A DNA stretch of 64,000 nt from Bigelowiella natans CCMP2755 (taxonomy: Eukaryota > Protista > Cercozoa), in contig ADNK01001077.1 of assembly GCA_000320545.1 (NCBI GenBank), positions 8,759 through 72,758 of the forward strand, read 5' to 3'. Each line of letters begins with the position of its first letter. Positions within the stretch are counted from its first letter, which is position 1. A program made the translations under genes and the position numbers. The notes beneath the pieces are model-generated. The model searched no databases. It was not told the DNA's origin and worked only from the letters and a program-made list of their open reading frames with translations. Shown in pieces: positions 8,033 through 61,430 of the stretch.

Positions 8033-8063
<31 letters not shown>

Positions 8064-9055: not shown

Positions 9056-9090
<35 letters not shown>

Positions 9091-9289: not shown

Positions 9290-9324
<35 letters not shown>

Positions 9325-9782: not shown

Positions 9783-9866
<84 letters not shown>

Positions 9867-14195: not shown

Positions 14196-15578
14196 ACAGT
14201 TGTTTCAAAGGTGCTGTTAATACTATTTAGTAGTTCTACGCAACCTCTCCCTAATAGTAGTAGTAGAAGAAGAAGTAGTAGTAGTAGTAGTAGTAGTGGT
14301 TGTTGTTGTAATTGTACTGCTGCTGGTGTTTACGTGTGTCTGCAGGTGTATCTGGAGATAAAGAATATTGGATTGGAAGCCTTTGATCGGTCTAAATATG
14401 ATTAAATACTATCAAAGAGAGAACAAGAAAAAATAATAATATATTGTAGTGAAATCATCATCATCATCATTATCATCATTTCTATTCTATCGCTCACCCG
14501 TAGCAAATGACGATTACGATGTTGCTACATAGAGTGCTATATTTATGATAATATAAATTCAAATAATCCAAGCAGCTGCTACCTTTGAAGATCAGTATGC
14601 TGATAATAATAATAATAGTACATGTTGTTCAACTGCTATACGGTGATAAATTTACGATATTATAATATCATCTTTTAATAAATAAAATAAATAATTAAAG
14701 GAGTTTACCTCGAAAATAAAATATGCTGATAGGGCATGTTTTGAAGCCTAGAAGTATTAATATGAAGAGAGAGATATATAATTACAAATAAATAAAATAT
14801 GCTGATAGGACATGTTTTGAAGCCTAGAAGTATTAATATGAAGAGAGAGGTATATCACAAATAAATAACGCTAGTAGAGTACCAGTCAGCAGCAGCAGCA
14901 GTAATAGTAGTAGTAGTAGGCACGGTGGTAGATAAAGACGATAATCCCCCACTTTGACTATATTAGTAATAAACCATTTGATGATGATGGTACAGCGCCA
15001 CCACAACAGACAACTAACCGACGAAGGACTTCTACTACTACTACTACTTGGCCAAGGGAGTGTGTTTCTGCTCTAACTCCAACCTTATTATTTAATTTTT
15101 AAGATTAGTCATAACAACAACAACAACAACAACGACAACGACAACAATAAAACGATGATGATAACAAAGAACTGAATAAACATTCATACAATTATCATAA
15201 TTATATACATACTAATACATTCCCCACCGAAGGAAGCATCTTCCCTCATTTTAACAGCAGCAGCAGCAGCAGCAGCCGTATCAGCACATTGATGCATATG
15301 TCTCTCAACATCATCAATACAAATCAATACCTCAACAGAATCATTGATGCATATGTGTCTCAACATCATCAATACAAATCAATACCTCAACAGCACATTG
15401 ATGCATATATGTCTCAACATCATCAATACAAATCAATACCTCAACAGAATCATGAAAACAATGATTCACTTGTGATTTCACTGAGAACCTGAAATAAAAT
15501 TGTTATTTAGTTACTAGTAACGTGTAGGTTGACATCATTCGCTCACAACTGGAGAAAGAAGGAAAAGAATCTGCAGAT

Positions 15579-15627
<49 letters not shown>

Positions 15628-16542
15628 GAAACCCGTTCTTTACTGAACTAGAAACATAATAATCGATAATTTATCTATTCGCATAGCCATCGTCACCCCA
15701 TCGTTATTTTGCAACAAGTGCTGACCTGTCTGCTAGCATCACAGGATTTATGAAAGAAATTTGATCGATAAACCGAAGAATCTGATCAAACAATAACAAC
15801 AAACAACAACAACAACAACAACACATGTACTTGTGCACTTATTCAACAACAAGAATTCTGCTTGCTGATCATCCTAAAATATGTCAATAGTTGCAAAACA
15901 ACCCCCTTGATGTATGGTATAGGTTACTGATCGTATCAGTAACAGCATATAATGGTTATTATTACCATTTTCTGACGAGTGAATCGGTGGGCACTCACAC
16001 TCCTTTAAAGAAAGAAAGTAGTGTCAATTAATATCATCATTATCAAAATACCATCACCCGCAACAACCAATAAAAAAGTTTAAAAGTGTGTTTGTTTTGT
16101 GTGTATGACATGGCTGATGATGATACATCTTACTAAATGCACTACGCAATCCTTATCATGATCATCTACTATGCCATAAATACAATGTATGGTGATTGTA
16201 CTTGATGATCAATATCTACTTCTCATACCCGCATGCAATCATCCATGCCATTGCCTGGCCCCCGAAACAGTTCCCCATATGATTTGTGTGCTGAGTAGAG
16301 GTTGTTTGCTTTGTTGTTGATGTCACACTAGCAGAGTTGTGTTTTATGCATCATCATCGTTATTTTGTTCTTGATCATCATTATACCACCTGTGGCAGCA
16401 CGATTTCCGTGCTTTGTGTGTAGCTTTGTAAAGGTGTCTTCTTTCTCCTTGCTGTGTGTGTATATTTGTGTTTGTGTGTGTGTGTGTGTGTGTGTTGGTG
16501 TTGTTGGGTCATCATCAATATGTAATTACAATAACTCACGCG

Positions 16543-16574
<32 letters not shown>

Positions 16575-17519
16575 TTACCATTACTTCTACACAAAGTGGA
16601 AGAGTAGTGGTGGTGAGGAGAATAAGGTGGAAGTTGGTGTTGATGTTGCGCAGATTAGGAGGAGGAGGGTCATTCAATTATAATATTTGGCTCCTACTAT
16701 TAATTTGATGATACAGCATCGTGCAGATAATAATATTAGAGAGTAGTAAGTAAGTAGCAACATGATCCTGTTGAAGGTCCTTTTGATATAAACGTCAATG
16801 AAGATGCACGGCGTCTAGCATATATATATACATAGCAGCAAATATTTCAAACAAAACAGATATTTTGCGACAACATTAACCCTCTTTCTTTCTCCTCCTC
16901 CTCTTCCTCAGATACTAATAAAGATGCTGTTGCTGCTAAGATCACGGCTACAAGTGGTAGTAGTCATTCACACAAGCAGCGGCAGCAGTGGTAGTAGAGG
17001 TGGTAGTAGACGTTATTACCATAGCCGGTTGTGTGACCATTATGCAAAATATGATGATTATAATAGCTATTATTACTAACTACTGGCACCTCTCATCTCC
17101 TCCTCCTCTTCCTGCTGATATAGGCAAGTTTTGTGGTGCATTCGACGTTGCAGTGGTAGCAGTCTCTTTACCATCGTCTTCAGGAGGAGGAGGAGGAGGA
17201 GGAGGGGGTGGATGATTTGGGGCTTTTGCCGTAGGAGATGGAGGCGGCATCATTACCAGAAGCGAGTTGTTAATAGGGTTGTCTCTCCTACTGCTTGTAA
17301 CACCCGGTGCTGCATCATCATTACCATCATCCTCATCCTCCTATTGGTGGTATTTTACGAATAAATATGTAGTAGTAGTAGTAGTAGTAGTAGTAGAGTA
17401 CTACTACTACTACTACTACCGAGTACCCCCTTAAGAACTACTAACAATTCATATAAGTACTGATTATTATTAACATGCACTAACTACTTCTACGATGCTA
17501 CTACTGCTACTGTTGGCAT

Positions 17520-17551
<32 letters not shown>

Positions 17552-18539
17552 TCTTGTATCTTTTTTACTACCTGAACCACGACGACCCCCATTCCGATGC
17601 TTCTCTTTCCTCCTCCTCCTCTCTGTTTCTTCTGGTCAGTATGGTCCTTTCCATCCAACTCTGCTACCATTCCTATTCTTTCTTTTTCATCCTTCTTTTC
17701 AACCTCAACTAATGGCGGTGGTGGCTCTATATCCGAGGTTGAACGTATGCGAGTTAGGAGGGATTTGAAGGTGTCTTCGATCAACTGATGATGATGATGA
17801 TGATTATTATTATTATTATTGCTATTATGAAAACATGTAGGAGGAGATATTAAAGTAGTCGAAGTAAGAGTAATAATAGCAGCTGTAGTAGTAGGTTTGG
17901 ATCAACAATTGATGATGCCGATGAGAGATGAATGATAATAAAACAGAGATTATTTTATACTTTATACTTTTGGGAGTATCAGATAACTACTCAACTATCC
18001 CCTGATAGCAATATTGTCATGAAACGGAAACCAACATCATTATTCGTCATCATTATCATCCTCATCATCATCATCCCTACCTTTCTCCTTTCTAATCGTA
18101 GTTGCCTTCGCTCTAAAGCTTGAGCGTATCGTCTCATATTTTCCTGAATAATCACACATCAAACGACAAATTAGTCGACGATAGAAGGAAAGAAATATCC
18201 CAGCAGACAAACAAATAAACAAGAAACGATTATGAAATAATATCCTCATAAATGCGCAGCAGAGAGTACATTACTGTGCTACTTACAAAGGGGTTTAAAG
18301 CTGAAATTGTTGAAATTTTTAGTGCTTGGACGGCTGATGGTTTGCCGTTGCAATATTACTAAATACCACTGGTAAGAATTTATCAACACATATATGTGTA
18401 TATATTGGTATTATTTACGTATGCTTATGGACACCACATTAGATTCTATTAATTGCATTAAAGAACAAGCTTACTTTCATATTCTTTGTTTTCATATGTT
18501 CGATCAAATGGAATGACAACTACTATTAATGGCAGTTCT

Positions 18540-18575
<36 letters not shown>

Positions 18576-18769
18576 ATACCTGATCATTTCCTGGTGACAG
18601 CTTAGGAAGCACTCTTTTCTTTTTGTCGGGTCCTTCAAAAGATGGTGGTGGTAAACAATACCATACACTATTACTTACTTTGAGGAGCGATTGATAGTAT
18701 CTACAAGCAACACCTACTTTTCACGCTACTACATCTCCTACTACTACTACAACTAATACCAACAAAATA

Positions 18770-18805
<36 letters not shown>

Positions 18806-19173
18806 GTGTAACATACAAATTTTACCTAAACTCACAAACGTGAAAAATGCCCTGCAAACAACCTATTCATCACGACACAGAGTTGAACAAATAGACGTGA
18901 GTGTATTCATCACGACCATATAGTTAAACAAATAGACGTGAGTGTATTATTTTCTCCCTCTGCTTTCATCACTATTTCTTTCGAATCTTTCCCCCACCAT
19001 CATGTGTTTTTATAGAATACGTCTCTTCTGTCTTATATCCTACTACTCATAACAACAACATCAACCGACACAAGACAGAAGAGAAACTAGCTACACGTAG
19101 GAGGGAGACCATAAAACAATCACCACCCTTTTTTTGCCTGTCAATAGCGTCTCAGCGAAAACCTTTTCATAAT

Positions 19174-19224
<51 letters not shown>

Positions 19225-20890
19225 AGGAAGGGGGGGGGGGGATATAATATACGGTAGCAGCAGACAAAATGAGAAGAATGATATCCATTCATTTGCAGTT
19301 TCTCTTCAATATCCTGCATATACTACTAGCTGCTTTGTTGCAGATAATATCAGTCTTTTTTGGTTTACGGATGAAAACATTAAGCTGTTCCCATCTAACT
19401 CTGATAAAAACACTTACTTTACAGCCAACTTCCATAGAGGTTCGAAACGCACGATTCACTGTGATCATAACAAATCAATTTTCCACTTAAATACATGAAT
19501 ATATGGTGAAATGAATAAATCTGAATAGATGGCATAGAAAATCCATTCCCTAATAAGTTAGCAACCTTGAGTATAAACAATTACAGCATCTCCATACTCA
19601 GGGTCATAATCCATATGTACATCGTCCACTGTAATAAACAATATATCGTTATATCGTTAATGCTGCACATTAACTACTAATAGTAAGGTTGAACAAACCA
19701 CATCTTTTTTTAAAGGAGGAAACTCAAAAAATTTGAGAATAAAACAAAAGCAATAGCATTTATTCTGTCTACATACTTGCAGCTGTTACTGATGACATCC
19801 CAGAAAACTGAGTAGTAAGACATAGGAGGAGGAGGAGGAGGAGGAGGAGGAGGAGGAGGAAAATATATAGAAGATAGAAGCTGTTTTGTGATTATTTGTT
19901 TTTAAGCAGCCCCCCCCCTATTTGTAATAATTGAGACTAGAAAGCACCTTTTCTGCAGACATACACGCTGTGATATCCATCCACTCAAGAAGCTAATTAT
20001 TCATGGATGGATGGATGGATGGATGGATAATTATTATGCAGAGTTAAATGAGTAGGCAGTAGTGCATCATAATTGATAACATCCCTGCTCCTAGCGAAAC
20101 AAAGAGTAAATCTTTCATAGTGGATGGATCGCTCAATATCAGAAGAAGAGGTGTTCAAAAAGATGTTACGTGGGAAGTGTAAGGTGTAGAGTTTAACAAA
20201 ATCACAAAAAGCTTTCAGAGAGAATTTTTGAGACTCCTCCCCTGATAATTAAAAACGACGACATGCTATAGGTGATAACGTATAAGCAACCTTCCCGTTT
20301 GGTAGCCCTTCTTTTCCAACGATCTTCAAAATTATTTTGCATGCAATGTCAAATACAAAACTTCTTCTACACACACATTGCGCATATTTATTTTAAGCAA
20401 GTGTTAGTAGTTACCTTTGTCATTTCAGTCGTTGTATCCTCAATCATAAGTATATCTAAAGATGATCGTTTATCGGATGATCATGTTCAATTCTTAAATC
20501 TCCCTTTCTCTATTGAATTCTAATGAACTCGGTGCTTTATAAGGGGTGTTGACTGACCATGGTCATTTGGAGGAGATGTGAGTGATGAGGACGAATTCGA
20601 TTTTAATGTCGAGTCTGAGTCTACTGTGACAAAGGATTGCTTATCAGAACTTGAATCGTAGTGATAAAGCAATTAGAATGAACCCGACGATGTACTAATT
20701 TGCCCCAGAACAGTGCTGGGACGCTGTTGCATTTTGATCCGAGGGTGTGTTGTCCTTAAGAAGGAAGGAAGGAAGGAAGGAAGGGTAACTATCCCTGAGG
20801 AGGGAAGGAAGGAAGGGCAAAAAGGAAATAACCTTTTTGGTACGAGTACGATCTGTAAGAGGGAGGAGATATGAGCATTCCCAGGTAGAT
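7043..20890 (-). CDS. ACOT11: Acyl-CoA thioesterase, ACOT11/ACOT12-like (two hotdog domains plus START) with an inserted PDZ domain; over 30 small exons, 5' end uncertain
   Basis: Spliced exons give hotdog 1 (LLEWMDITACMSAEKFSGMSSVTAAMDDV...QVNRAFRTSMEVGCKVFAE, about 19120-19990) and hotdog 2 ([25 protein letters not shown]...QVNHCFHDSVEVGVRAE, about 15050-16450). START motifs are VFEVLHDF..RRKWD, NDFCLLRSWR, LISFRSVKHPKLP, RANVLSSGYVI and CELTYIVQ. PDZ reads GSLGITF...GQAKRLGVKKGWLLTHV. Stop at 7043-7045. Confidence 0.85.
11558..11682. repeat. Perfect 62-bp tandem duplication in an intron
   Basis: ttgtacagtttatgaaatcagattatcctactacaagatacacactactactcgcacacgat occurs twice in tandem. Confidence 0.9.
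11705..11862. repeat. Duplication of an exon 3' end and its splice donor
   Basis: ccttgccgccttggtataccatatcccatttcc occurs twice (minus strand KWDMVYQGGK). One copy has a GT donor and the other GC. Confidence 0.8.
14714..14849. repeat. Tandem duplication of a splice acceptor and most of an exon
   Basis: aaataaaatatgctgatagg(g/a)catgttttgaagcctagaagtattaatatgaagagagag occurs twice. Minus strand ASKH(A/V)LSAYFI. Confidence 0.85.
15283..15453. repeat. Three copies of an approximately 55-bp unit containing a splice donor
   Basis: cattgatgcat..gtctcaacatcatcaatacaaatcaatacctcaacag occurs three times. The last copy holds the donor after ...DSVE. Confidence 0.85.
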
Positions 20891-21485
20891 CTAGATCTAA
20901 TATTATTTATTATATTTATGATGATGTTTGTCATGATTAGTGCCCTATTTATCATCTGCGACATCAATCTTTTCGAGACGTTCCTACTAAATTAACACGA
21001 TCAATTGTATGAATTAGAATCGAAATCAACGAATACCTCACATATTTTTAAGACTAGAAAACAAACTCTTGTTAGTCCACAGTCTGTACTGTAGTAAGAT
21101 GTTTCCGGCAGTGAATAATTTCCTAATATTGACATATCATTATGTTGCTGCTATAAGATGTGATTAATATCGAGTGCATGATAGTGATGATGATTATAAA
21201 GATGTTTTCTGTGATGAATATTGGCACAGTAGTATGTTCCTGCCAGTCATCATCATGAGTAGTGTTAATTACGTTGTGATAATTATGTGAAAACCATAGG
21301 ATGTTTTCTGCGATAAATATTGACACAGTAGTGATTACTTTGAATGATTATTGTGTAAAAACAATATTGACCAGCCGTTAGTTCCTTGCTTAACGTAACA
21401 TTTCAAACGCAAAGGGCCACAGTTCCCCTCCCCATCCTTCACTCCGCCCAATTCAGCATCTCACACTGTCAAGGATCGGGTGTGC

Positions 21486-22217
21486 ATGTATAGGAGCACG
21501 GTGTCTGTTGGCCATGGTGGTGGTCGAAGGCGCACAGGCTCCGCTGCAAGGAAGAAAAAGCGAAGTTGCGAGGAGGCCCCTTCTTCTAAAGTCACCGTTC
21601 CCTCTCCTGCGCAAGAAAAATGTTTAACAGTAGAGCCGTCACCACAACCCGTGAAGATGTTTCCAGATCTTAAAATAACAAGAAAGAAACACCCACAAAT
21701 ATCACTTGACAAAAAAGCGAAGGCGAAGAAAAAGCCTTTCAAACCGAAACTTCCGAAGAAGAAATTTATAAGACCTTCCCTATCGGCACAACTGGGATCA
21801 ATAATGAGTAAGACAGATGATCTCACAAATACTATACGAAAATTGGGGGGGCTAGAATTAAAGGAACAAGCTCTGTTGAACATCTCATCTCGTAACTTTG
21901 TCGTGGGGAAACTCACTTCGAAATTCCCGTCTATGGTCCATTTCTACATTGACCGATGTACATACGAGTTTTTCCATCCCTTTGAGAAGAAACAAGTTAG
22001 TATGATAATGTTTTATCGGCACATGGTAGAGGTTCAGTTGAGTAGCTCACGTCGAGAATTTAAGTTTAGGATACCACACAAGCTGATACAGTTTCCAGAT
22101 GACTACAATCCATCGTCGCAAAAGCTGTCCATTTTCTTCAATTCCTCTTTAGACGTAGAAAAGGTTAGGAAGATAATTCTTCCTAAGATTGTTATGAATA
22201 ATGGTAGTCTCATATAG
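21486..22217 (+). CDS. Intronless hypothetical protein (basic N-terminus, globular beta-rich C-terminus)
   Basis: 243-codon open frame with normal protein composition, ATG at 21486 and TAG ending at 22217. Family not recognised. Confidence 0.7.
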   Translation: MYRSTVSVGHGGGRRRTGSAARKKKRSCEEAPSSKVTVPSPAQEKCLTVEPSPQPVKMFPDLKITRKKHPQISLDKKAKAKKKPFKPKLPKKKFIRPSLSAQLGSIMSKTDDLTNTIRKLGGLELKEQALLNISSRNFVVGKLTSKFPSMVHFYIDRCTYEFFHPFEKKQVSMIMFYRHMVEVQLSSSRREFKFRIPHKLIQFPDDYNPSSQKLSIFFNSSLDVEKVRKIILPKIVMNNGSLI

Positions 22218-22279
22218 CACTGAACTGAATAAAGAGCCTGATCGAGCAAAAATTCGAGGTTACAATGTTCACTTTTTAA

Positions 22280-23470
22280 GGCATCTGTCGATCACATTGA
22301 TCCCCATCCTCCAACTGTCGCGCGCATTCAATCCAAATTTCATGACAATGTGATCTGCCCTCGCTGCGTTTGCTGGCCGGTGGGGCTAGGGGGTCATACA
22401 GATTCACTGTTTTGTGGATTGAGCGAAGCTGCGATGCATCCCAGCAGTAGCATTTTGACAAATGATCAATGCCACATGGATCTGGAGACATAGACACAGT
22501 GTGCACAGACATGGCTAGACAGCACATGTCAATCAACACACACGTCTAGACGTGTCTCTTTGTGTGCACTACATGTCTAGATGTGCAGTGCATGTCAACA
22601 TGTGCACGTCTGTGCGTGTGTGGCACTTTTTGGAGATCTGCTAGCTAGAGATGCGCCCACCGGTCCGAGTGTCCAAATCCAAACGACGCCACGAGTGCGT
22701 GCTAGCGTGGAGTGCATCGACGCATCGACACATCAGACATCGCATCGCACGGACGCACGCGAGGTCCGTTCCAGCGTTGTCACGAACTCCAGAACTGCTC
22801 TGCACGTCTGTAGCAGCGCTAGCTAGCTAGCAGTTTGCAATCTAGCGATGTGACATGCACATGCCAACAATGAGTGTGCATGCATGACTCCACGATCGAT
22901 GCGATGTACGAGCGACAGCTAGCTAGACCACCCACATCGACCATTGCAATCAAGTGAGATGCAGAGAACAAGTGTTGTGCCAGGTGGCATCAATGCCAAA
23001 CGAGTGCTTCAGCATTGCAAGCAATGCTGTCTCGCTAGTTTGAAGTTTTTCAATTGTGAAACAGTGTTGCACAGTGTTGGGCAGTGTCACGCGCGATGCT
23101 GCTCTCATCTGGTGCTTGCTGTTGAGCAGCATTGCCAGGTTGAGTCAACTGCTCAACACCACGCAGCACTGCCTGGTGGCGATTTGAGCTCACAAACACT
23201 GACTCTCGTCACCATTGTTTTTTCCAACTCCCCCTTCTCCATCAATCATCATCATCACCATCATCACCAATGTTGCAATCTCACGTTTCTTGAAACGGAC
23301 ACTTTGGGTTCCGAAGTTTTGAAGTGTTGTGATTCAATGATGCAGCATCACCTTGCAGGCAACGCTGTTCACCTTGTAGTTTTTCAATTGTGAAACAGCA
23401 CCAAAGCACGGCATTTAGCAGTGCTGCGCGCTGAGCAGCATTGCCAGACTAGATCAATGCTGCAGTGTTG
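22280..23470. other. TpA-depleted, CTAG-retaining intergenic island
   Basis: No TA in 23041-23340. Most remaining TA are CTAG, including (CTAG)3. Diverged direct repeat at 23045-23152 versus 23379-23462. Confidence 0.85.
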
Positions 23471-23798
23471 GCGATCCAAGGCGATGAAAACGAAGTGTTT
23501 CGAAGGTGAATGAGTTGTGGCGATTCTTTTGTGTCATCGGGAAGTCTAGTTGATTTTTCCACTGCGACATGGTTATGGCACCCAAAAACATCAGAAACTG
23601 GAGGACGTGCAGCCCCTTCGAATGGAGAAGACATGGATGAAGAAGCATTCTTTCGTCTACTGCCCCGTTCATCAAAGCAGTCTCGCCAAATCACAGACAA
23701 AACGACTTCCAAGCAATGAACGAAATTACTAAATGAGAAGAGCTAAAATTGGTACCTGTTTTGCATTGAATCACAGTTTGAGGATGTGAATCACACAG

Positions 23799-25802
23799 GC
23801 TGGCGCAGCAAAAACAACGGGAATCCATTTCAAGCCTGGATGCAAGCACGTTGCCGACAAAAGAAGCTTTATTAGAACTATTTCCTGGAGGGTCACCCGC
23901 CAGCACACCCGATGTTAGTCTAAGAACAAATATTGAGGGAAAAATCACATTCCTTTCAAATTGTCAATCATTAGGAGCCTAGCACATTTGACATTAAACG
24001 CAGCCGGCGCACACAGAGGACGAGCTCGATAAACAGCGACTGTTCCAACCAAGTGAATTTTCATTCGCCACCAAAACTTACAAATGGATCACCTCTAAGC
24101 TGTTGCTCGAGGCAAGAAGCGCGGACCAAGTCTCTAAGATCCCGATCTACAGACAAAACTCAGCATGAACTTCTGAAAAACCAAGACAAAGTGATTCAAA
24201 AATTCAAAATACATGTTGATGTTGTGACATCTTTCATCATGTTTCTAAAACTGTGATTCATGATCGGAAAAACCGCTTACATGCTGTATTTGACTAGATT
24301 GACGCAGAAGCAGTTTCACATAGTCTCGAGGAAACGACAGCTGAGATCAAACTGGCCCACCAATCTCTACTCAACAGCATAAAAGAATGCCGCTATGCTG
24401 ATGATCGCCTCCGCGGTTTGATCAAGTGTAGGTGATTAAAACAAATGCGGTTTTTAAAGTTTCATTCTTGTAACAACAATGCATCTCAGATTTTCAGAGA
24501 TTCGAGAACGCCTTCTGGAGGAAGAAAAGGCAATATTACAGACAATCAAGGATCAAGAAGTTGCTAGTCTACAATCCATCAAGCTTGCAGTTGACTCCCA
24601 CAGTAAAGATATTCTCACTATCGAGGCTATGGCGTCTGCAATTAGGAGCTCATTCTCATTGAAAACGACGCAGAAGTCCACAGATTCCACAGATGTTTAT
24701 CATGCTGCGGCAAAAATACGAAGTCGAATTATTCATGAATTCGAGCCTCCAGGAATAACAAAGTGCAAATTTAAACATGACGTGTATGATATGAAGGAAG
24801 TTCTTTTGGGGCAAAGTGTGAAAGTCTGGACCAATGGAAAATTCTCGCCATCTCGAGTAGGTTCCACTGCATTTGTGAAACCGAATTCCTTAATTCACAC
24901 ATGGCACTGGACAGTGAAGCAGAGTAGCTGTAGCTACACGATTTCAAAAGATAGGAAAACAATAGAGTGTTTCGGACACGAAAGTTTAGGAGGATGCGAA
25001 GCAATCGGTAACGTAAAATGGAGAGTGGGAATACACAGGTATACATTGTTATCCAACGAATTTGTTGTTATATTTCTTATAAATTTCGATAGACTCTTCC
25101 TTTGTATCTTTGCATTGCCAACATCATTCATCCATTTTTCTAACAAGACAGATGGAGTTTGAAACTCACAACGAGTCGTCTTACGGAAGGGGGGGCGTTC
25201 GGAATTGCATGCATGTTGGCATTTATCTAAAATGATGGGAATGTATCAATTTTTAATTTCATATTTTATTTATTAGTGGGGTGTCGACGCATTGTAATTC
25301 AATTTCAAGAAATTCAACTACTACTCCATCCATCCAATCAATCCCATCGAGGAGTCTAACTGGGGTTTCGAACTCTGGTACAAATTAAGCCAAAAATGAA
25401 AGCTCAGCTTTTTACATCATTCAGCACTTGAGCACGAACATTTCTTCAACCAGATCCTCCTTAATTTCGACAGGTTGTGCAGCTGATGATATTGAAGAAA
25501 ATTATGGATTCAATGAGCAAGAAACCTTTGGAATATCTCTTGATGGGGATGTACTTTACAAGCCCATGGAGGCTATGGAGTATCTTGACGAGCCTGTTGT
25601 TGTGCAAGGAAAGAAAGCCACAGTTTTTCTGGAGCTTGACTGCGACAAAAAAACTCTTCAAGTGAGGGTAGAATCCCAAACATCAAGTTCTATGAAGATT
25701 CAAAATCACGGCTGGAACCTGCCTGAAAATGCAATTTTTCAACCATGGATCTTCATTGGTACAGCAAACTGTGCCGCATCAATACTTTCATGCGCACAAT
25801 GA
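23799..25802 (+). CDS. Coiled-coil plus SPRY/B30.2 domain protein; start unresolved
   Basis: In-frame exons give a coiled coil (RFSEIRERLLEEEKAIL), then WHW...ISKDRKTIE...AIGNVKWRVGIHRWSLKL...GAFGIA and VFLELDCDKKTLQV...FQPWIFI, typical of SPRY. Confidence 0.7.
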
Positions 25803-27602: not shown

Positions 27603-28299
27603 TCCTAACGAGTACCTCCTCCTTGAGATCCTTTTTACGGTTAGCATCCGGGTGATCACTTACAATCTTTGATATTACAGTTAGCAATAGGATACTCACT
27701 AACAACCTTTTATATCGCGACAATTGCATTCAACGTTGCTCTTAACACATTTACTGGCGTTTCTACTTTAGCGAATACATCCCTACTTTTTTTACTTTTA
27801 TTCTTGTAGAGTTGTTTCTCTCCTTCTTTTCCTTTAGTTTGTCGTTATACTTATCTGGAATCTAAATAAAAGGTGTAATTCGTATACCCGTATACCACAC
27901 CAATTCACAAAAGATAGCCGTAGCATGTCAATATGACGATAGGGTTAATCTTACTGTTACAATTTGTACTTTCGTTTGAGGTGTCAACAGCTCTCCACTG
28001 GATAGGCGAGGAAATATCTAAAAAAATTAAAAAACATAGACGGATGGTGGGCACTAGTGTGATTAGGAATTTGTAAGATTTCTAATACTCAAACTATTGC
28101 AAGAAGAAATCCGAATCACCAGTGATTCTAAACGTTTCCCGGCATGCTTCACTGCATGTTTCACTTCTTCCACACTTGTTCAGTTAACCTGAAATGCATC
28201 TGGTGGTATGGTCCCCAAGTTTCGAGAGTTTGGAGACACTGGAATTTCCGAAAAAAATGTGGCTTTCGAGCCGGGGCACATTGAACAATCGGCGCCCAT
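26201..28299 (-). CDS. Multi-exon hypothetical protein with an MGxxC N-terminus and a RanBD/PH-like segment
   Basis: First exon reads MGADCSMCP.... Internal LHLLHDKESGKTRYVMKAEE resembles the RanBP1 LLxHKxTGKxRLxMR motif. Acidic last exon ends at TAG 26201-26203. Middle exons not fully resolved. Confidence 0.5.
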
Positions 28300-28589
28300 T
28301 TCCCACTTCTCAAATGGTGATTAGTCACCACGAATGCTTCCTCCCCAATGACGACGCGAGTGTTGTGCAGCAACAGTCGATGATGATGATGTTGATAATG
28401 ATGGGATGGAATTTGAACACACAAATTAGGTGGAAAGAGCAGCCATTCAAATTCAGATCAGATTTGATGTTGTGAACAATATCACAGGGCATTTGTACCC
28501 CTACGACAAAGAAAAGTTATGTCTTACACCCCTACGAGTCGTACGACACACATAAGTAATGTCACAGAGCGTTTGTACCCCTACGACAT

Positions 28590-29760
28590 CGAAATTATCA
28601 GGAGCACTGAAGAGGCAGCTAGATCCACTGAGATCCGTTCATGCCATTTTGAAAAACCAGCTAGTTGATTTGCTAGTCACAGTCCTCACTGAAGCCAGTT
28701 CGAGGCACTGCATTTCGCACACTGCAAATGTCTTACAACATTTTGGAAATGCAGTTCGTCATCATTGTTCATTGTTCATTGTTCATTGTTCATCTCTGAT
28801 CAGTCTTTGCAAGAGTGTGAGAACACGTGAACATGCAACAGTGGTTCATTTCCGGTCTCGACTCGGCACGAGCTAGCGAGTGCACTTCGGCAATTTCATC
28901 GAATTGACGCGGATCGATGACACTTGTTTGCGTGATTGCTGGCATGACTAGCTAGCTAGATGAGTGCTAGCCAGCTAGGACCCAGGACTTGAAATCACAA
29001 TGATGGAATGATCGCACCCAGCTGGTTGTCACATGGTGACAGGTGACGATGTGACTCCAATGCAAAGTCTGGAGGTTGAACAGCCGTTTGTTCGCTTGAC
29101 TGGTGTGGGCCCTGCCACCACGCTAGCATGCCACCCAGTCTCACATTCATCACGAGATGCAGTCGCGAAAACCACTTTCAGTGTGAAGCCTCCTGAAACT
29201 CAGAACTCAGAACCAGAGAACCTGAACTAGAGCTAGAGAGTGAAAAACAGCTGATGCATGATGACCGTCACCTGTGCCCGCTGTTGATGTCTGCGGACAT
29301 GCACTCACACTCGCTGTGGCCAGACACGAGCGCATGTGCATGTGCCACACACACTTGGAAGCACAGCTGTCAGGAGCACCTCTGCACCTCTGACCTAGCT
29401 AGCTAGCGTGTAGCTAGCTAGCTGTGTCAACATCGCATGGCGCACCGTCCAACCAACGAACAATGGGAACACAACGCCATGAGCACATCTAGATATCATG
29501 CTAGCATGCTCAACGCAAGTTTCCATGCAATCCTTCGCGTGCATTCATTGCCGCATTCGATCTTGTCTAGCTAGCTAGATAATCTAGTTCGTTGCGTGCT
29601 TATGATGTGGAGGACTTAGCATTGCAAAATGCATCACATCGCCATGCTAGCATGCTGTCTATGTCATTGCAAGTCATGATGTGATTGTGTGCAATCTGCA
29701 AGGAGAATGAATTAAGTCGGGTGAGTGGTTCATCACATCATCAACCTCATCTCAGACAGT
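28590..29760. other. TpA-depleted, CTAG-retaining intergenic island
   Basis: Hand count 28741-29460: 15 TA, of which 14 CTAG and 1 GTAG. Contains (CTAG)n runs and (CATTGTT)4. Confidence 0.88.
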
Positions 29761-29834
29761 AGACACAATGTATCGATGTCACTTCAAAACTCTACTGATC
29801 AAAATACCCAACTGTTACTACTAAAATTCCTACT

Positions 29835-30193
29835 CTAAAGAGCCCGCCGCTCAAGAACTAACCATTACAATTTGTAGTCCTTTTTGAACAACAGCACATT
29901 ATCATCCTCATTCTCTCATATGTTGCCATCATGAGAGATTAAGCAACTCACTCTCTCTTAATTTGCTTTTCTTACGGCTCGATTCTTCTATTTCAGAACA
30001 GATATACCTGCCCGACAAAATTTGAGTAGTTATTAATCTTATTACAAACCAATGGTACGTTGAGCTAAAAGGATGATGCTATATCTATCTCTCATATTAG
30101 CGCTATTGTTTGCACGTACATATTCTGAGAACTCCATGTTCCAAGAGACATATACACCTCAGTAACATTCACACCTGATATAGATATATCCAT

Positions 30194-38675: not shown

Positions 38676-39423
38676 ATGTCGGCGCCTCGTAATAAATTCA
38701 AGCTCCTCAATGTAGTGCGCCTCATCAGCGAGTCTTCATTGTTATCATTATTATCATTACTATTGTTATTATTATCATTATTAGTGCACGGTTGTCGGAA
38801 ACATTTCGGTCGGAAAGAGCTCCCTCTGCATCTCCTACACTATGAATGGAATTAGAAACTATCCGAGCAGGGGCAAATTTAGTTAAATCATACCAACAGT
38901 GAAAGCATCAAATGTTGACAGCCTCCTGAACGTAATTTTTGTATTGGCCTCAGACCTTTACTCCTTTAACATACTCTGTGATGGTAAAGCCACACAACTC
39001 AACATAACTGACACACCGGGGCATGAAGACTACGACCGATTGCGCCAATTGAAGTACAAGGACACCGACGTCTTCATTATTGCTTTTTCCATCGACTCTC
39101 CGTCAACTCTGATGAATGTAGCGGCAAAGTGGGAACCAGAAATTCGTCGCCATCGTCCGGGAGTTCCTATCATCCTGGTAGGCTTGAAGTCCGACCTCCG
39201 CAAAAGCCAAGTACACAAAAAGGACTATGAGGATGGGCGGCCGTCAATTGTCTCTTGCGAGCAGGGTGAGGAGATGGCCAAGAATATCGGCGCCACAAAG
39301 TACATGGAGTGTTCTGCGCTTACTCGAGATGGGTTGGAGGACGTGTTTGAAACCGCCTGTTGCACGGCGATGAGGCCCCGAGAAAAACCCTCGGGGAAGA
39401 ATCCAAAATGCGTACTCCTGTGA
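38676..39423 (+). CDS. Rho/Rac-family small GTPase, atypical
   Basis: Exons 38676-38711, 38785-38872 and 38954-39423. G1 GNISVGKS, G3 DTPGHEDYDRLR, G4 GLKSD, G5 ECSAL, CAAX box CVLL. Confidence 0.9.
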
Positions 39424-39579
39424 GTTGACCTTGCATGAATGAATTTGATGCGAGATGAAACGCTCGAACTCTCAAAATTCTCTTCATCTTGTTGTCGGCC
39501 TACAGGCAACATCAGCAGCAAATGGATTGCCGATGGCAATTCTTGTCTTCTAGCTACGTGTGTGCGCGCGCGCGCACGC

Positions 39580-39621
<42 letters not shown>

Positions 39622-40080
39622 ACGTGCGGCTTGTATTTCTCCACCGGAACTTTGTGGTGGAGGTGTGCTGTGACCTATTCTGCATTTCCATGTTTTGCAA
39701 TGCCATTAGCCATGATGGCTGGTGCCACTTGGGTGCCATGCTCGTAAAAGATATGAATTGCACCATTTACTGATGGCTTGCCAAGCCAGCACGCTTGTGG
39801 CGCAGCTTCCTGACATGCGGTTCACGTGCACATGAAAACGTTAAGCTTGGATCGGGCGATGCTGCGCGATTTTCAAGATGCGATATCACATTTGAGAAGC
39901 TTTGCAGGCCATGATCACATGCTGCCACACTCTTAAAAAGCACAGTGATGATCAAATGTACGACACCAAACGGTTGATGATGCACCATTATTGCAAACAT
40001 TGGGACATGGAATGGTTACGTTTGTCACCATTCCACACTTGTGAACAATGCGAATATAAATGTTTAGAATGCGTTGAAAT

Positions 40081-44799: not shown

Positions 44800-45950
44800 T
44801 TTGTGGAACATATGCTAGTGAATTAGACTCATCCACACATTGCTCTTGCTAAGTGTTGAAAACAGAAGATGCACGGGCCATAGCAAAGCAGAAGATCTAG
44901 CTATGCACTCTCGTGTGCTAGACCACTATGTGTGGGCACATCATGTCTAGATTCTAGATGTCTCTGTGTGCGCTATGAACTAGATGAACTACGTGGACAG
45001 CACTGAGCACACAGCAAATTCTTGCGTGCTAGCGTGGCGCAATGCGATGTCAGTTAGATGTGCTACTAGTGTGGCAAAGCCTAGGAGACTGTCATCATTC
45101 TAGTATTGTGCTCCAATCTAGCAGTGCTGATCACTTTCAGTGCAGCAGGCACTCTTTTCTAGTTTTGCCAGCTCATGTTGTGATGTCAATCTAGCTAGCT
45201 AGCTCTAGCAGCTAGAGCTGCACAACATCTGTGTCCACTAGTTCTAGAGGCTAGGGAGTTCTGGACACGCTTCACATTCATGCGCAGCTAGACAAGCTTT
45301 TGTGCACACATGTCTAGATGTGGAACACAACCTAGCAATGCTTGTGTTGTGCCCATGCTCTGTTACCATCAACACATCATGTTTTCACTAGCTGCATTTG
45401 CACATCATGCTAGCGCATGGACATGTCGATCTGTGTTCATCTAGCTGCTGTGCTGCTGTGCAGCTGCACATTGACATCATTACATCGCATCAAACCAACA
45501 CGTGACAAGATAGATGCTGGAACGGCTGGTGTTCCGCTACCTAGCTAGTTAGCTAGCTGCCGCCGCAAATCTAGACATGCGATGCACACCTGACACATTT
45601 CTAGATCCACAGCTACACTAGCGCTAATGAAGCGGTCCGTTCGCATACCGTTGTCGCGTGTGACTAGTAACTCTAGAGCTATGTAGCTATACGCACATGA
45701 TTCTGGAAAACAGGCAATGTGAAATGCAATGCACTTTGCAGCTTGAGGAGATGGTGTGTACTAACACTAAAACAATTGATGTGATGCATCGCCACATCCA
45801 CTCGCAATGCAAACGCGCATCGTGGATGTGCGAACAATGATCACGATTATTCATTGAAGGCCAAACCACCAGTAGGCCGCCACTGCTAGACTAGACTGCT
45901 TCACATCGACTCACATGGTTATCAACAAGATGATAATGAGACATGGCCAT
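44800..45950. other. TpA-depleted, strongly CTAG-enriched island between convergent genes
   Basis: Most TA are CTAG, CTAN or NTAG. Dense ctagctag runs at 45191-45215 and 45541-45557. Confidence 0.85.
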
Positions 45951-46044
45951 AAAGTACGTTGTAAACGTATTGTGCAACGATAGTCCAATTTGAGCTGAGA
46001 TCTCACAATCAAATTTCTTTGATACATTGATATATCAGTGAATA

Positions 46045-53399: not shown

Positions 53400-54800
53400 T
53401 GATGCATGGCTTGAGTATTTTTCCATAAAAACACATCGCGTTGCTAGATTGTGATGATATTATCTAGCAATAGACGCTTGCGCAGATGAAGCAGAGACAA
53501 TGCAATGCACACTCCATGCAATGTTGCCATGTCTAGTGCCTCTAGGTCTCCATTGAGTGCCCCCCTCTCTTCAAGACCAAAGACACCATTGCTACTCTTA
53601 CCTAGTTACGCACTGCTAGACTGCTGGACTGTTGTGGACACAACAACACAACAGATGATGAACACCATGTGTGGCTTGCATCGTCGCCTGCCTAGCTGCC
53701 CAGTTGCTCTAGCTAGCTAGTGCTGTCGCAGGGCGCACAACGGCGTCCCAGTCTTCTAGTCTTGTGGAACTGGCTAGCTGGGGGCCGCATTTCAGTGCGC
53801 CCTACGATGCCTAGCAGCTAGCGCCGTGCAAGTTCGGAAGCAGCGGTTGCATCTGGGGCTCCCTGACTGAATGCTGTGTGCGAATCGGGGCTAGGGGGTG
53901 TCGGTGCCAACGCGCTAGCATGGCGCGTGCCAAAACACTGACCATGCTACAATGCTAGCATGGCTACGATGTCGCGATCGAAATGCTAGAATGCGCAGGT
54001 GGCGCACAGAAGCTAGAGAAGGCTACCCACGACCTCGCGGAGAGGGATTTTGTGACCTCGGCCGCGTCGGCTGGCTAGCTGGTGACGGCAACTGGGTGAA
54101 TGCGTCGAGAGAGGTTTGCTAGTTTGTCAGCCTTTTGTTGGGGTCGTCCGGTGCGTCCTGTCTAGCTGTCTGTGTCTGCAGCTGCGTGGATGATCCAATT
54201 CCTGAAGACAAATCGTTTGAGAACGACTTCACTAGCTCAATGTGTTGCGCCTAAGATGTGTTTATCGCGATGTCGCTTCTAGTGATTGGCACACCGACGC
54301 AGGTCGCTGAGGTCTTTGATCGACGTTGAACTTGCTAGCTTGGAGTGCAGTTGAACCAGCCAGCCAGGGTCCAGAGGGTGTCCGCCTTGCTAGCTTGGAG
54401 TCCCAGTTGGATTGTTGCCAGAATGGCGTCGTCGACGCACACCAGTGGGATGACGACTTCGATTGGGATTTTCGGGTTCACTTTGGTGCAAATGCACGGG
54501 TCAGCACCAGGGCATGCTGGCATGTGAAGCGCGAAGTGTGACAGAAATCCGAACGACTTGACCGTTGAATCGAGGGTGAGGTCTGTTGGGTGCCACTTGC
54601 GGCCAGCTAGCCAGCTTGCTAGCTCTAGAGCTTGGTACAGTCCGCAAAGGGCCTTGTTCATTTACCAGACGTAACCGTTGGGCACAGAGACTCCTTGCGG
54701 TGGCTGAACCCATGGAGGTGTGCGGCCAGAATGTGAACGTTGTCGTCGTCGTTGTCAAAGTTGTTGTTGGTGTTGCACAAGAGAGACCGCAACTCCATGA
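53400..54800. other. TpA-depleted, CTAG-retaining island containing a retrotransposon relic
   Basis: TA occurs mostly as CTAG or CTAC. Lies between the TLC stop codon and the HAD start codon. Confidence 0.85.
53990..54710 (-). mobile_element. Degenerate Ty1/copia LTR-retrotransposon reverse transcriptase fragment
   Basis: Motifs in copia order: QPPQG..PNGYVW*MNKALCGLYQA[insert]GRKWH, GF...ADPCICTK, LVCVDDAILA, IKDLSDL, AQHIE..VLKRF, PLREVVGSLL. Stops and frameshifts present; no LTRs recognised. Confidence 0.85.
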
Positions 54801-54939
54801 AGTGTCAGATTTTTCCAGGATAATTTCTGTGCAACCAGAAAGTTTGAAAACTGGCAAGGATTTTTTTGGACATTTCCTTGTCGCAAATACAAAACAAAGG
54901 CAAATTTGTTGTCCTTCGGCTAAAATCCAAGCTGCGACA

Positions 54940-56694
54940 ATGCGCCGCCCTCCTCCCCCCTTCCACCTGCTAATACTATTGGCCCCTCTTGCTCTTTTCG
55001 TCTTATCTACCAAGAATATTGGAGCAGGGTTAATTACTAACTCTGTTAGGAGCAAGGGGCTGGTGAAGATGAATACAGCTCTAAGCAGTGCTCGAAACAA
55101 GCTTCATTGGAGAGAAAGATGGGGGGGTACTACTGTTCTCCCCCCTCATTCAAGCACTGCCTTTTACGGAAGACAAGTTCTCTCTCCAAAGTCCATGTTC
55201 TCGATCGAAAACGTTCAGAAGTTCATCAGTGCTGATGCGGTGGGTAGAATGGGTGTAGTGTGAGATATCCAGGCAGTTTTATATTGAAAGGGTTGTTAGC
55301 TTTCTTCTCTGAAACCAACTAATAATCCAAACGGATAGAGGATGAAATCACACAATTTGGTTTAATATGAAACATGAATTTAATATGTTGTGTATTCATT
55401 AACAACACAGTGGAAATCCGAGGCGAAGATGATGGTAGATAGGTTGCTTGACCGTGACGTGGAGAAGTTTGCAGGTATGCTGCTGCTGTTTAATCATCAA
55501 GATATTAACCACGAGGATGATGACCTACGATAACTACTAATTATGAGTGATTTATGGTACACTTCATTGTGTGTATGTGAAAGAGAAGATGAATGAACCT
55601 GGGTGTTTGTTTTTCTCTCTCCCTCCACAAATGGCAGATGGTGAGATACTGCAGCACCCTACTCTCGGCGAAATGGAGGTGGTGACGATCATCATTATCA
55701 TTTGGCATTACCCATTCATTCACCTAGTTTTCTGTTGCTGTTTCAAAGTCTAATGTTACTCAATTAATCTGAATAATGATAAATATAATAAAAATGATAA
55801 TGAAATATGATGTAATTTGTTTTATCTAACACACGCCTAAAAATCTACATAACATATTTTTATTTATGTGTTTATTTTTAAGTTTTGAATTTGATTTTTC
55901 TTAGGTGGTATATCTTACCGCTCCAAAACGGGGAGGAAGCAGGAGAATAGGCCCGTTTCTAAGGCCAACCAAGATTTCTAGTGACGACAGTCTCCCACAT
56001 AATCATCGAGAGAAGCAGATCAATCGTCTTCTTAAGGAAAAAATCGGCTTCGATCACGAGTAGGTTCATATTTACGGAAGGATGCAACAGACAGCATATA
56101 TACAACAGATCATGCTTTCATTGTCGTGGAGAAAGAAATCGATGGCATATGATGATGATGATGATGGTGATGATGACACTATTCTTCTTCTTCGTCTTCT
56201 CTCGTGTTTAGGTACTACATAGGAGGCTCTGCTCGTAAAGCCGTTATTGCGCTAGACTTCGATGGAGTTCTAATTGACTCGGTAATAATAGCTCCCCCCC
56301 CTCCCCCCCCCTCTCTCTCTCTCTTAGTGTGTATATGTATATGTATGTGTGTGTGTGTGTGTGTGTGTGTGCTCCTGAACATGTACTTGTGTGTTGTTGT
56401 TATTGTCATTGTTGTTGTTGTTGTTGTGTATCACCACATTCTTGTGTGTAGGTACCAGAGAGCTCAGAGACTGCTTGGCGTACGGCGGAAAAAATTTGGC
56501 CAGAATTGTTAGTTGCTAATTAACTACTTAAGAGAGAAGAGAGGGGTCGTTATTACGTTATATAATAGGTAAAGATAACAATAATCCACATCAGTTAGTG
56601 GAAAGATTTACGTAATAATGCAAACTGGAAGAGGAAAACAGTTTTGGTGAAACTGAAGTGTAATACAGTGTAAATATGTTCTGTGTGTTGCGTG

Positions 56695-59687: not shown

Positions 59688-60259
59688 TGACTCATCATAC
59701 ACTCACGACTCCTTGCTAGAGATTGATAAGCTAATTAGTGATAATGCTATAGAAACTCCATCAATTAAGTTTATTTATGATATTCTGAAGAAAGTGACAC
59801 AAATGCGAAAACAGTGATTAACAACACTGCCAAAGATACAATACAGCCCAAATGCTTCATCTAAGTTTTTAACCACGTGCTTATATTGATCTGTGGTAAT
59901 ACGAGGGGTTGATAGTTGGTTTGTTATCATCATCGTCATCACCACATTATGAGTCAACATACTCTTCAAAAAAGAGGTCATCACTAATAATTTGTTCGTA
60001 GTTACGCACGGCCGCTGAAGCTTTGGGAAAGACATGCCAATGATCATGAGCGGCTGAACGAAATTCCGCACGCAATTGCGAGAATGGATCGTGGAGAGGA
60101 GACTGAGGACGATGTAAAGCTTCTCCAAACGACCCCAAAGCGCTTCTTTAAGGGTTATACATTAGCGGAGGACGATTCGATTTTGAGATAGATGAAGTGA
60201 GTAGCAATGATTGATATTGATGGTGTTTAGTACGGCCACGACGGCAACAGTGAGAGATT

Positions 60260-61430
60260 CTACCAGCATGCATGTGCCAAGTCATGCAAACATCATCGAT
60301 CACGCCAAGTAAAATTCAAAATTAAAGTTTGGAAACTTGATGAGCCCTGATTGACTTACCGGCTAGCTACTAGCTAGCCGGGCACGAACATTTGCACTTT
60401 TGATTCGTCTTATGCATGCGTGCAAGTACTTTAGCACGGTCTACTTTCCCCACGAGATCCGGACTTGCTAGCATGGCAGATGGCGTCGCATGTGCTAGTG
60501 TGGAATGGAACTTCATGCGAACTCATGGACAGATCTAGAGATGCGATGGACACGAAAAACATGCTAGTATGTCTAATTCCATCTTCGCGAACATTCCATG
60601 TCATGCACTGTGCGATGCTACGAGCAATCCACCTAGCAATCACTTGTTGGTTTTGCCATGTGAGTCCCAGATTCTGGAAGCTGCAACTTTTCAATCGAGC
60701 GCACCACGCACTTCCAGACTTGCACAAACGGCGCAAGCTAGCAAGTGAGCGATGGCAACCAAATCTGTCGATTGCTGTCGTAGACGTGAATTGCACTGCC
60801 ACCGACTGGCCAAATTTGGCCAATTCTGTGTCGATGTTGCGTTCCAACGTTGTGCACACACCATGGCCCTCACTCTGCACTCGCTGGCTCGTCGCGTCGT
60901 GTGCAACGAACAGCCTTGCAGTTTCAAGAAATGAATCGAACGTCGGTCACGAACGTTGAACTTTGCTTTGTTGCTGGCTAGCTGGCTTGTGGCTGCGAAG
61001 ATCAGAGGAGACATGGGAAAGCAAGCACTTTGCACACATCGCAACAGGGCCCACAACAAAAGCGTTGCGAGTCACAGCAAGGACCAAAGGACACGTTGAC
61101 ACCCCACTAGCCCACTTGCATGTGGCCCAGCTCACAACTGTGGACAACAGCAGCGAGCCAAGATGGCAAGAATTGCATCGAGCTAGCGAGGGTGATGTGT
61201 TGTCAACTCAGCAGTTGGTCGGTTTGTCTGCCTTCGTTCAATCACGCACTCTGGCACTGCACGTTGCTGCATCTGTTTCATCGTCAATTGAAACTGGGCT
61301 GTCAGGCTAGCAGGGTGAATGGATGAACAAGTGAAGGGGGGATTCCACGATGTGAAATGTGAGCAATTTTTGGTTTTGGAAGTGCCTCTCTCATAGGTGA
61401 TTTTGTACATTGCGACAAGATTTAAATCAT
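60260..61430. other. TpA-depleted, CTAG-retaining intergenic island
   Basis: Hand count 60601-61380: 8 TA, of which 6 CTAG, 1 CTAC and 1 GTAG. Confidence 0.88.

What the first reader, a model, noticed from the sequence alone, without database searches (positions are those of the whole stretch)
53990..54710. Copia RT relic gives the mutation direction: conserved Tyr codons became Cys or His
Seen on the minus strand: KALCGL (tgc at 54644-54646), GRKWH (cac at 54590-54592), DPCIC (tgc at 54488-54490), LVCVDD (tgc at 54437-54439) and AQHIE. Known Ty1/copia consensus motifs are KALYGL, RxWY (less strictly conserved), DPCxY, YVDD and QxxYI. Each change is TAC to TGC or TAC to CAC, so both strands were hit, and the catalytic YVDD motif is altered. 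This shows TA was ancestral, which composition alone cannot.
Basis: partly seen in the sequence, partly recalled or inferred. Interest (0 to 1): 0.9.

Follow-up and report, generated by a model that had tools for sequence, protein, structure and literature searches.

The report
Hypermutated copia reverse-transcriptase relic
A broken piece of a jumping gene in the alga Bigelowiella natans has had its conserved tyrosine codons rewritten to cysteine or histidine by the alga's TA-destroying hypermutation, a process first described in a 2026 preprint, so this is a clear example of it rather than a new process.

Summary

The stretch is a real Ty1/copia reverse-transcriptase relic (54,712 to about 53,998). 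It has two frameshifts and four stops. Pfam RVT_2 does not detect it. A metagenomic RVT_2 protein (P0003) does match it, at E 1.9e-20.

The three unmutated members of its clade carry Tyr, mostly TAC, at all five sites. In four natural pairs of intact and hypermutated copia copies in this genome, 165 of 172 Tyr codons became His (85) or Cys (80). In those pairs 92-97% of TpA became TpG or CpA, in about equal numbers.

One caveat applies. The nearest in-genome relative shows Cys/His at three of these sites, but it is itself TA-free (2 TA in 3,729 bases, no Tyr), so it is not a native counter-example.

The process and its direction are already published from mutation-accumulation lines (bioRxiv 10.64898/2026.01.13.699255). 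The relic's gene model (JGI 72908) sits in that preprint's Table S8. Other windows of this genome were already flagged by this scan.

New details found here:
- CTAG partly resists the process.
- The process cannot create stop codons.
- Environmental relatives show the same scar.

The parts
53500..54950 (.). TpA-erased island, GC about 0.53-0.58. It holds 1-6 non-CTAG TA per 250 bases, against about 13-42 outside, and 27 CTAG.
54218..54712 (-). Copia RT relic, main frame. It aligns to P0003 residues 31-166, from WVxPPxG through KALYGL, DPCxY and YVDD to QxYIE.
54048..54230 (-). Continuation of the relic after a frameshift (P0003 residues 159-202).
53998..54051 (-). Continuation after a second frameshift. 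REVVGSLL matches the copia (H/Y)RxVIGSLL motif (P0003 residues 202-217).
54644..54646 (-). tgc (Cys) at the Tyr of KA-x-YGL. This site is Tyr in P0003-P0007 and in all TA-normal copia of this genome.
54590..54592 (-). cac (His) at the Tyr of GREWY. This site is Tyr in P0004-P0007.
54488..54490 (-). tgc (Cys) at the Tyr of DPCxY. This site is Tyr in P0004, P0006 and P0007.
54437..54439 (-). tgc (Cys) at the Tyr of the catalytic YVDD. This site is Tyr in P0003-P0007.
54242..54244 (-). cac (His) at the Tyr of QxYI. This site is Tyr in P0004, P0006 and P0007.
54671..54673 (-). Surviving Tyr codon tac in NGYVW (P0004 has PGYAW), in a GTAA/TTAC context.
54603..54634 (.). Three 8-base insertions of the form N4-CTAG-N4, one nested in another. 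Together they add 24 bases, which is the in-frame 8-residue insertion ALELASWL absent from every relative.
54335..54337 (-). In-frame TAG stop that lies inside a CTTG-CTAG-CTTG insertion. The stop at 54119-54121 likewise lies inside TTTG-CTAG-TTTG.
54338..54800 (-). The public gene model JGI Bigna1 72908 (146 aa, P0001) is built on the relic. Its last 105 residues equal residues 4-108 of the 54338-54661 piece.

Best explanation
[quoted passage not shown] After integration it lay in a DNA domain hit by the alga's TpA-specific hypermutation. That process changes the A of a TpA to G on either strand, so TpA becomes TpG or CpA, and it runs almost to saturation.

Every Tyr codon (TAY) contains a TpA, so conserved tyrosines became Cys (TGY) or His (CAY). 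This includes the catalytic YVDD, which now reads CVDD. The process can only erase TAA and TAG stops and can never create an in-frame stop, so such relics keep long open frames and get called as genes.

Later the relic picked up stereotyped 8-base CTAG insertions, two frameshifts and four stops.

Shown here: the relic, the ancestral Tyr state, the spectrum and the context. Shown by others: new TpA mutations arising in the laboratory. Inferred: that the agent is an adenine deaminase acting on DNA.
For: Organism and locus: the relic's gene model is JGI Bigna1 72908 of Bigelowiella natans.

RT identity: summed E 1.9e-20 to P0003, which carries RVT_2 at E 3e-33. The relic shares the clade-specific VNPxxP segment.

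Ancestral Tyr at all five sites in P0004, P0006 and P0007, mostly as TAC.

Natural pairs of copia copies:
- 249-441 differences per pair, 87-92% of them A>G or T>C.
- 92-97% of reference TpA lost.
- TG and CA products are about equal (483 against 515 over the four pairs).

The A>G rate by 5' base is T 0.47, C 0.03, A 0.02 and G 0.01.

Tyr fate: 85 His, 80 Cys, 1 Arg and 6 kept, of 172.

Two hypermutated sister copies (L038, L039) differ between Cys and His at the same Tyr, so each was hit independently after insertion.

The island around the relic has almost no TA outside CTAG.

Mutation-accumulation lines show 230 of 231 new mutations in viral inserts are A>G or T>C at TpA. The relic's gene model is in that preprint's Table S8 of low-TpA, high-CpA+TpG genes.
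Against: Pfam RVT_2 does not match the relic, so family assignment rests on pairwise homology.

No DNA-level copy of the relic exists elsewhere in the genome. Its own substitutions therefore cannot be tabulated base by base, and only five codons can be polarised.

The nearest outgroups are anonymous metagenome contigs at 36-41% identity over the aligned stretch.

Two Tyr codons and a few non-CTAG TA persist in the relic.

No integrase, RNase H core or LTR was found, so it is only a fragment.
Confidence: 0.9

Rival explanations
1. The Cys and His residues are native to this copia lineage, so no mutation direction can be read from them.
For: The closest in-genome relative L005 has KAACGL, CKWH and LCVDD in an 1,158-aa open frame that scores 173 bits on RVT_2. 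P0003 has ELH, DPCLC and AQHIE.
Against: L005 has 2 TA in 3,729 bases and no Tyr in 985 aa, so it is itself fully converted. Its open frame is expected, because the process erases stops and cannot make them. P0003 has Cys/His at 9 of the 14 Tyr positions of P0004, with none converted the other way. Unconverted members differ from each other only by Tyr/Phe-type changes. P0004, P0006 and P0007 have Tyr at all five sites.
Confidence: 0.03
2. The changes were made before integration, by ADAR-like editing of the element's RNA or by editing of its cDNA, as in retroviral hypermutation, and not on chromosomal DNA.
For: ADAR prefers a U before the edited A, and retroelements pass through RNA and single-stranded cDNA. 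The two LTRs of the hypermutated element in L032 share the one converted TA, but one site is uninformative.
Against: TG and CA products are equal, so both strands were hit alike. TA-free zones run 1.3-1.5 kb beyond both LTRs in L032 and beyond one LTR in C873. The L032 LTRs also differ from each other at one AT site, which is a change made after insertion. New mutations arise in resident chromosomal inserts in mutation-accumulation lines.
Confidence: 0.06
3. The resemblance to reverse transcriptase is a chance product of a GC-rich, low-complexity island.
For: There is no Pfam hit. A local pol profile gives only E 0.04.
Against: The summed E is 1.9e-20 over three collinear pieces, and five independent clade members match at about 1e-13. 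It is the only place in 64 kb hit by any of about 150 copia proteins at E below 0.01.
Confidence: 0.01

Closest known systems
TpA hypermutation of integrated viral DNA in Bigelowiella natans (Mettrop et al., bioRxiv 10.64898/2026.01.13.699255)
   Same: Same organism, same TpA to TpG/CpA spectrum on both strands and same island composition. The relic's gene model is in their Table S8, and they report RT Pfam families enriched among TpA-depleted CDS.
   Different: They studied giant-virus and virophage inserts and worked from composition. Their text has no mention of LTR retrotransposons, tyrosine, stop codons or CTAG. Here the target is a copia element and the readout is at protein level.
Repeat-induced point mutation (RIP) of fungi
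   Same: A dinucleotide-specific transition hypermutation that inactivates transposons in place and leaves compositional islands.
   Different: RIP runs the opposite way, C to T at CpA, and so makes TpA and stop codons. It is also triggered by duplication. Here more than 25 near-identical copies of one copia family stay TA-normal while single copies are saturated.
APOBEC3 and ADAR hypermutation of retroviruses and retroelements
   Same: Deaminase-type transitions with a neighbour preference that wreck reverse-transcribing elements.
   Different: Those act on cDNA or RNA before integration and leave a strand bias. Here both strands are hit equally and the flanks are hit too.
Ty1/copia reverse transcriptase (Pfam RVT_2, PF07727)
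   Same: Collinear motifs KALYGL, DPCxY, YVDD, QxYI and VGSLL, and significant pairwise homology to RVT_2 proteins.
   Different: Too damaged for the Pfam model. The catalytic Tyr is replaced. The relic has four stops, two frameshifts and several insertions, and it lacks integrase, an RNase H core and LTRs.

Membership tests
Ty1/copia RT (Pfam RVT_2) | Match to the RVT_2 profile above its cut-off | tested here: not met
   No hit at E up to 10 on the five stop-free pieces. The site is not among the 44 six-frame hits in the genome.
Ty1/copia RT (Pfam RVT_2) | Significant homology to proteins that carry RVT_2 | tested here: met
   P0003 (RVT_2 E 3e-33) matches at a summed E of 1.9e-20 and at E 1.5e-16 in the genome search. 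L005 (RVT_2 173 bits) matches at E 3e-7.
Ty1/copia RT (Pfam RVT_2) | RT motifs in canonical order, including YxDD | tested here: met
   The order is KAL[C]GL, W[H], DPCI[C], [C]VDD, Q[H]I, VGSLL. The Asp-Asp pair is kept and the Tyr is replaced.
Ty1/copia LTR retrotransposon (whole element) | Integrase upstream of RT, RNase H downstream, flanking LTRs | tested here: not met
   Only the RT and the linker after it are detectable. The island is only about 1.45 kb long.
Targets of B. natans TpA hypermutation | TpA depleted with CpA+TpG enriched | tested here: met
   Window 54001-55000 has a TA observed/expected ratio of 0.42, and 11 of its 23 TA lie in CTAG. Non-CTAG TA number 1-3 per 250 bases. 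The gene model is listed in the preprint's Table S8.
Targets of B. natans TpA hypermutation | Changes are A>G or T>C within an ancestral TpA, on both strands | tested here: met
   Five of five ancestral TAC/TAT codons now read TGC (3) or CAC (2). The four natural copia pairs confirm the spectrum.
Targets of B. natans TpA hypermutation | Ongoing elevated mutation rate at this locus | not testable with these tools
   This needs the reads of the mutation-accumulation lines. The preprint reports new mutations only for two viral regions.
Fungal RIP | C to T at CpA, which creates TpA | tested here: not met
   The direction is the reverse. In the pairs, G>A plus C>T make up only 20-26 of 249-441 changes.

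The most novel reading that the evidence does not exclude
Tyr-to-Cys/His scarring is a protein-level fingerprint of a locus-targeted, near-saturating DNA adenine-editing defence. In this reading the defence also polices LTR retrotransposons, acts copy by copy rather than on repeats as such, and partly spares CTAG. It would also operate in wild marine protists beyond the sequenced strain, because two environmental members of the relic's clade show the same one-way Tyr loss. These are P0005, from a TARA metagenome, and P0003.
Probability: 0.4. Interest if true: 0.55.

Novelty: new member of a known kind. Interest (0 to 1): 0.35.

Why it matters
The relic gives an independent, sequence-only confirmation of the direction of the B. 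natans hypermutation.

It extends the documented targets from integrated viruses to LTR retrotransposons. The natural pairs of intact and erased copies give the spectrum and context at about a thousand sites.

It explains why TpA-erased junk is annotated as genes: the process removes stops and cannot make them.

It offers a simple screen, Tyr-free reverse transcriptases with Cys or His at invariant Tyr sites, for finding the same defence in other genomes and metagenomes.

Tried and rejected
- Pfam on five stop-free pieces of the relic gave nothing.
- The genome-wide RVT_2 scan did not list the site.
- A DNA search of the genome for copies of 53,600-55,100 found only the relic itself.
- A local pol profile built from 11 genomic copia sequences gave only E 0.04 for the RT piece, plus non-collinear noise at 53,700-53,900.
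- A possible upstream RT piece at 55,435-55,500 (E 2-4) is too weak to count. So are weak matches at 39,783-40,077.
- I first read L005 as an intact relative natively carrying Cys/His, and rejected that once its composition was seen.
- I first read P0003's His/Cys at three sites as native, and rejected that after the one-way Tyr loss test.
- The LTR comparison meant to decide between editing before and after integration was uninformative. The LTRs natively hold only two TA.
- The per-strand test of whether the -2 C or the +1 G protects CTAG was inconclusive because of saturation.

Full report
**What is in the sequence**

On the minus strand one frame reads WVQPPQGVSVPNGYVW*MNKALCGLYQALELASWLAGRKWHPTDLTLDSTVKSFGF...ADPCICTKVNPKIPIEVVIPLVCVDDAILAT...S*AQHIELVKSF.
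- tgc at 54644-54646
- cac at 54590-54592
- tgc at 54488-54490
- tgc at 54437-54439
- cac at 54242-54244

The frame carries four stops, at 54664-54662, 54337-54335, 54253-54251 and 54121-54119.

**Is it a reverse transcriptase?**

Pfam says no. None of five stop-free pieces hits RVT_2 even at E 10. A six-frame RVT_2 scan of the whole 91-Mb assembly lists 44 sites but not this one.

Pairwise evidence says yes.
- Of 30 copia open frames from this genome, one (L005, contig C2995) hits 54712-54416 at E 3e-7.
- An exhaustive phmmer search with the 108-residue piece found the relic's own gene model and P0003. P0003 is a 512-aa metagenome protein that carries RVT_2 at E 3e-33.
- P0003 aligns to the window in three collinear pieces with a summed E of 1.9e-20. 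These are 54712-54218, 54230-54048 and 54051-54004, in three different frames.
- Its relatives P0004-P0007 give about 1e-13. The genome-wide search with P0003 gives E 1.5e-16 at 49% identity.
- Nothing else in the 64 kb is hit by about 150 copia proteins at E below 0.01.

The relic is therefore real. It is a fragment of about 715 bases with two frameshifts. No integrase, RNase H core or LTR is detectable.

**Organism and prior knowledge**

The relic's gene model is JGI Bigna1 72908 (fgenesh1_pg.22_#_12) of Bigelowiella natans. Earlier notes of this scan had named the alga and a known TA-destroying process.

A literature search found the source: Mettrop et al., bioRxiv 10.64898/2026.01.13.699255. 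In their mutation-accumulation lines, 230 of 231 new mutations in two integrated viral regions are A>G or T>C, all at TpA. The preprint also reports TpA-depleted, CpA+TpG-enriched CDS enriched in reverse-transcriptase domains, and it proposes an ADAT2-like deaminase.

Gene model 72908 appears in their Table S8 of 470 such genes. The preprint's text never mentions retrotransposons, LTRs, tyrosine, stop codons or CTAG.

**The apparent refutation and why it fails**

L005, the closest in-genome relative, has KAACGL, CKWH and LCVDD in an 1,158-aa open frame. But L005 has 2 TA in 3,729 bases and no tyrosine in 985 residues. Its contig is TA-free for more than 5.7 kb. It is a fully converted copy, not a native state.

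Its open frame is no sign of function. Within a codon or across a codon boundary, TpA to TpG or CpA can turn TAA into TGA or CAA and TAG into TGG or CAG. It can never make a new in-frame stop. In line with this, erased copies have 0-8 TAA and 4-13 TAG, against 44-93 and 74-95 in normal copies. One has a 713-aa antisense open frame.

P0003 shares His, Cys and His with the relic at three sites. P0003 is itself partly converted:
- Of 14 Tyr in P0004, it keeps 4 and has 7 His, 2 Cys and 1 Pro.
- P0005 (94% identical to P0004) keeps 8 of 15 and has 3 His, 3 Cys and 1 Phe, with no change the other way.
- The unconverted members P0004, P0006 and P0007 differ from each other almost only by Tyr/Phe.

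**Polarising the five sites**

P0004, P0006 and P0007 carry Tyr at all five sites. P0004 and P0007 use TAC at every one; P0006 uses TAT at four. Each relic codon is thus one transition inside a TpA. Three are on the coding strand (TGC) and two on the other strand (CAC).

Cys plus His make up 6.7% of the relic, so five of five by chance is about 1e-6.

The RxW[Y] site is Tyr only within this clade. The TA-normal copia families of the genome have N, S or D there.

One clade Tyr codon survives, at 54671-54673.

**Direct test on natural pairs**

No DNA-level copy of the relic exists, so I used other copia families that have both TA-normal and erased copies: L033 against L032, L002 against L037, and L006 against L038 and against L039.
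- Differences per pair number 249-441, of which 229-403 are A>G or T>C. Of those, 196-367 lie in a reference TpA.
- Of the reference TpA, 92-97% are lost, to TG and CA in near-equal numbers. Examples are 101/95, 181/182 and 106/105.
- The A>G rate is 0.47 after T, against 0.01-0.03 after other bases.
- Of 172 Tyr codons, 85 became His, 80 Cys, 1 Arg and 6 stayed.
- L038 and L039 resolve the same Tyr differently (SICGL against SIHGL, CSDPC against HSDPC). Each copy was therefore hit independently after insertion.

More than 25 near-identical copies of that family remain TA-normal, with observed/expected ratios of 0.91-1.02. Repetition as such is not the trigger.

**Context and reach**

TA survival depends on the tetranucleotide:
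- CTAG: 54% kept (20 of 37)
- CTAC/GTAG: 22% kept
- CTAA/TTAG: 12% kept
- all other contexts: 0-3% kept, including 0 of 150 for ATAG/CTAT

TA-free zones exceed single elements. In L032 the zone runs 251-8250 around an element at 1590-6751. In C873 it runs 14,500-22,500 around an element at 14,698-21,120. In C485 it covers more than 14 kb and holds two copia elements.

Together with the equal use of both strands, this favours editing of resident DNA over editing before integration.

**After the hypermutation**

The island at 53,500-54,950 has 27 CTAG. Fifteen of them are flanked by an exact 4-base direct repeat. Examples are CTGG-CTAG-CTGG at 54076, TTTG-CTAG-TTTG at 54120 and CCAG-CTAG-CCAG at 54608.

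Three such 8-base insertions, one nested in another, make the 24-base ALELASWL insertion that no relative has. Two of the four stops are the TAG of such insertions.

Young erased copies such as L005 have no CTAG at all. The insertions therefore accumulate later, and the relic is old.

The genome tool asks that proviral stretches be observed only. The natural pairs and the outgroups answer the same question.

**Verdict**

The process and its direction are already published, and the locus is already listed in that preprint by composition. This is a well-resolved new example of a known kind, with some added detail:
- copia elements as targets
- the Tyr fingerprint
- stop-free mutagenesis
- partial CTAG resistance
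- similar scars in marine metagenome relatives

Noticed in passing
L002/L037, L006/L038, L006/L039, L033/L032 (pairs of copia copies in G000): TA survival under hypermutation depends on the tetranucleotide. CTAG is 54% kept, CTAC/GTAG 22%, CTAA/TTAG 12% and all others 0-3%, including ATAG/CTAT at 0 of 150. TG and CA products stay balanced even in the asymmetric contexts, so the protection is not a simple one-strand block.
   Followed up: partly
window 53500-54950; examples at 54076, 54120, 54336, 54391, 54608: CTAG sites are mostly 8-base insertions of the form N4-CTAG-N4, that is CTAG plus a 4-base target duplication. Fifteen of 27 have exact repeats, and some are nested. They are absent from young TA-free copies.
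   Followed up: partly
L031 (G000:C2995:8000-17999) 4300-10000; L032 1590-6751: Fully TA-erased copia copies keep 1,158-aa and 1,590-aa open frames with no tyrosine. One has a 713-aa antisense open frame, and the L032 frame starts inside the 5' LTR. In eight of the 15 RT domains examined there is no Tyr and no stop.
   Followed up: yes
L050 (P0003), L052 (P0005, TARA metagenome scaffold) versus L051 (P0004): Environmental members of the relic's clade show one-way Tyr to Cys/His loss. At DNA level, 26 TA of L051 are CA or TG in L052, against 9 the other way. The hosts are unknown and are not this genome (best own-genome match 44% identity).
   Followed up: partly
L032 251-8250; G000:C873:14500-22500; G000:C485:21700-36000: TA-free zones extend 1.3 kb to more than 5 kb beyond the LTRs of the erased elements. 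In C873 one edge roughly coincides with an LTR end, at 500-base resolution. C485 holds two copia elements in one zone.
   Followed up: partly
L033 (G000:C3044:1-9000) 1834-6996: This copia element has 100% identical 277-base LTRs that natively hold only two TA, one of them in CTAG. Its TA observed/expected ratio is 0.6, and its coding region is split into two overlapping frames by a 1-base indel relative to the erased copy L032.
   Followed up: no
pairs as above: Outside TpA the highest A>G rate is at C[A]T (5.4%). The two LTRs of L032 differ from each other only at one CATG, read as CGTG in one and CACG in the other.
   Followed up: no
window 1-3000, 22000-24000, 28000-30000, 39000-40000, 45000-46000, 60000-61000: Six further TA-depleted, TG/CA-rich, CTAG-rich islands lie in the window. 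None shows copia homology at E below 0.01.
   Followed up: partly
window 55435-55500 (minus): There is a weak match (E 2-4) to the RT segment just upstream of the relic's start in P0004 and P0007. It lies about 720 bases away, in TA-normal DNA, and is probably chance.
   Followed up: no
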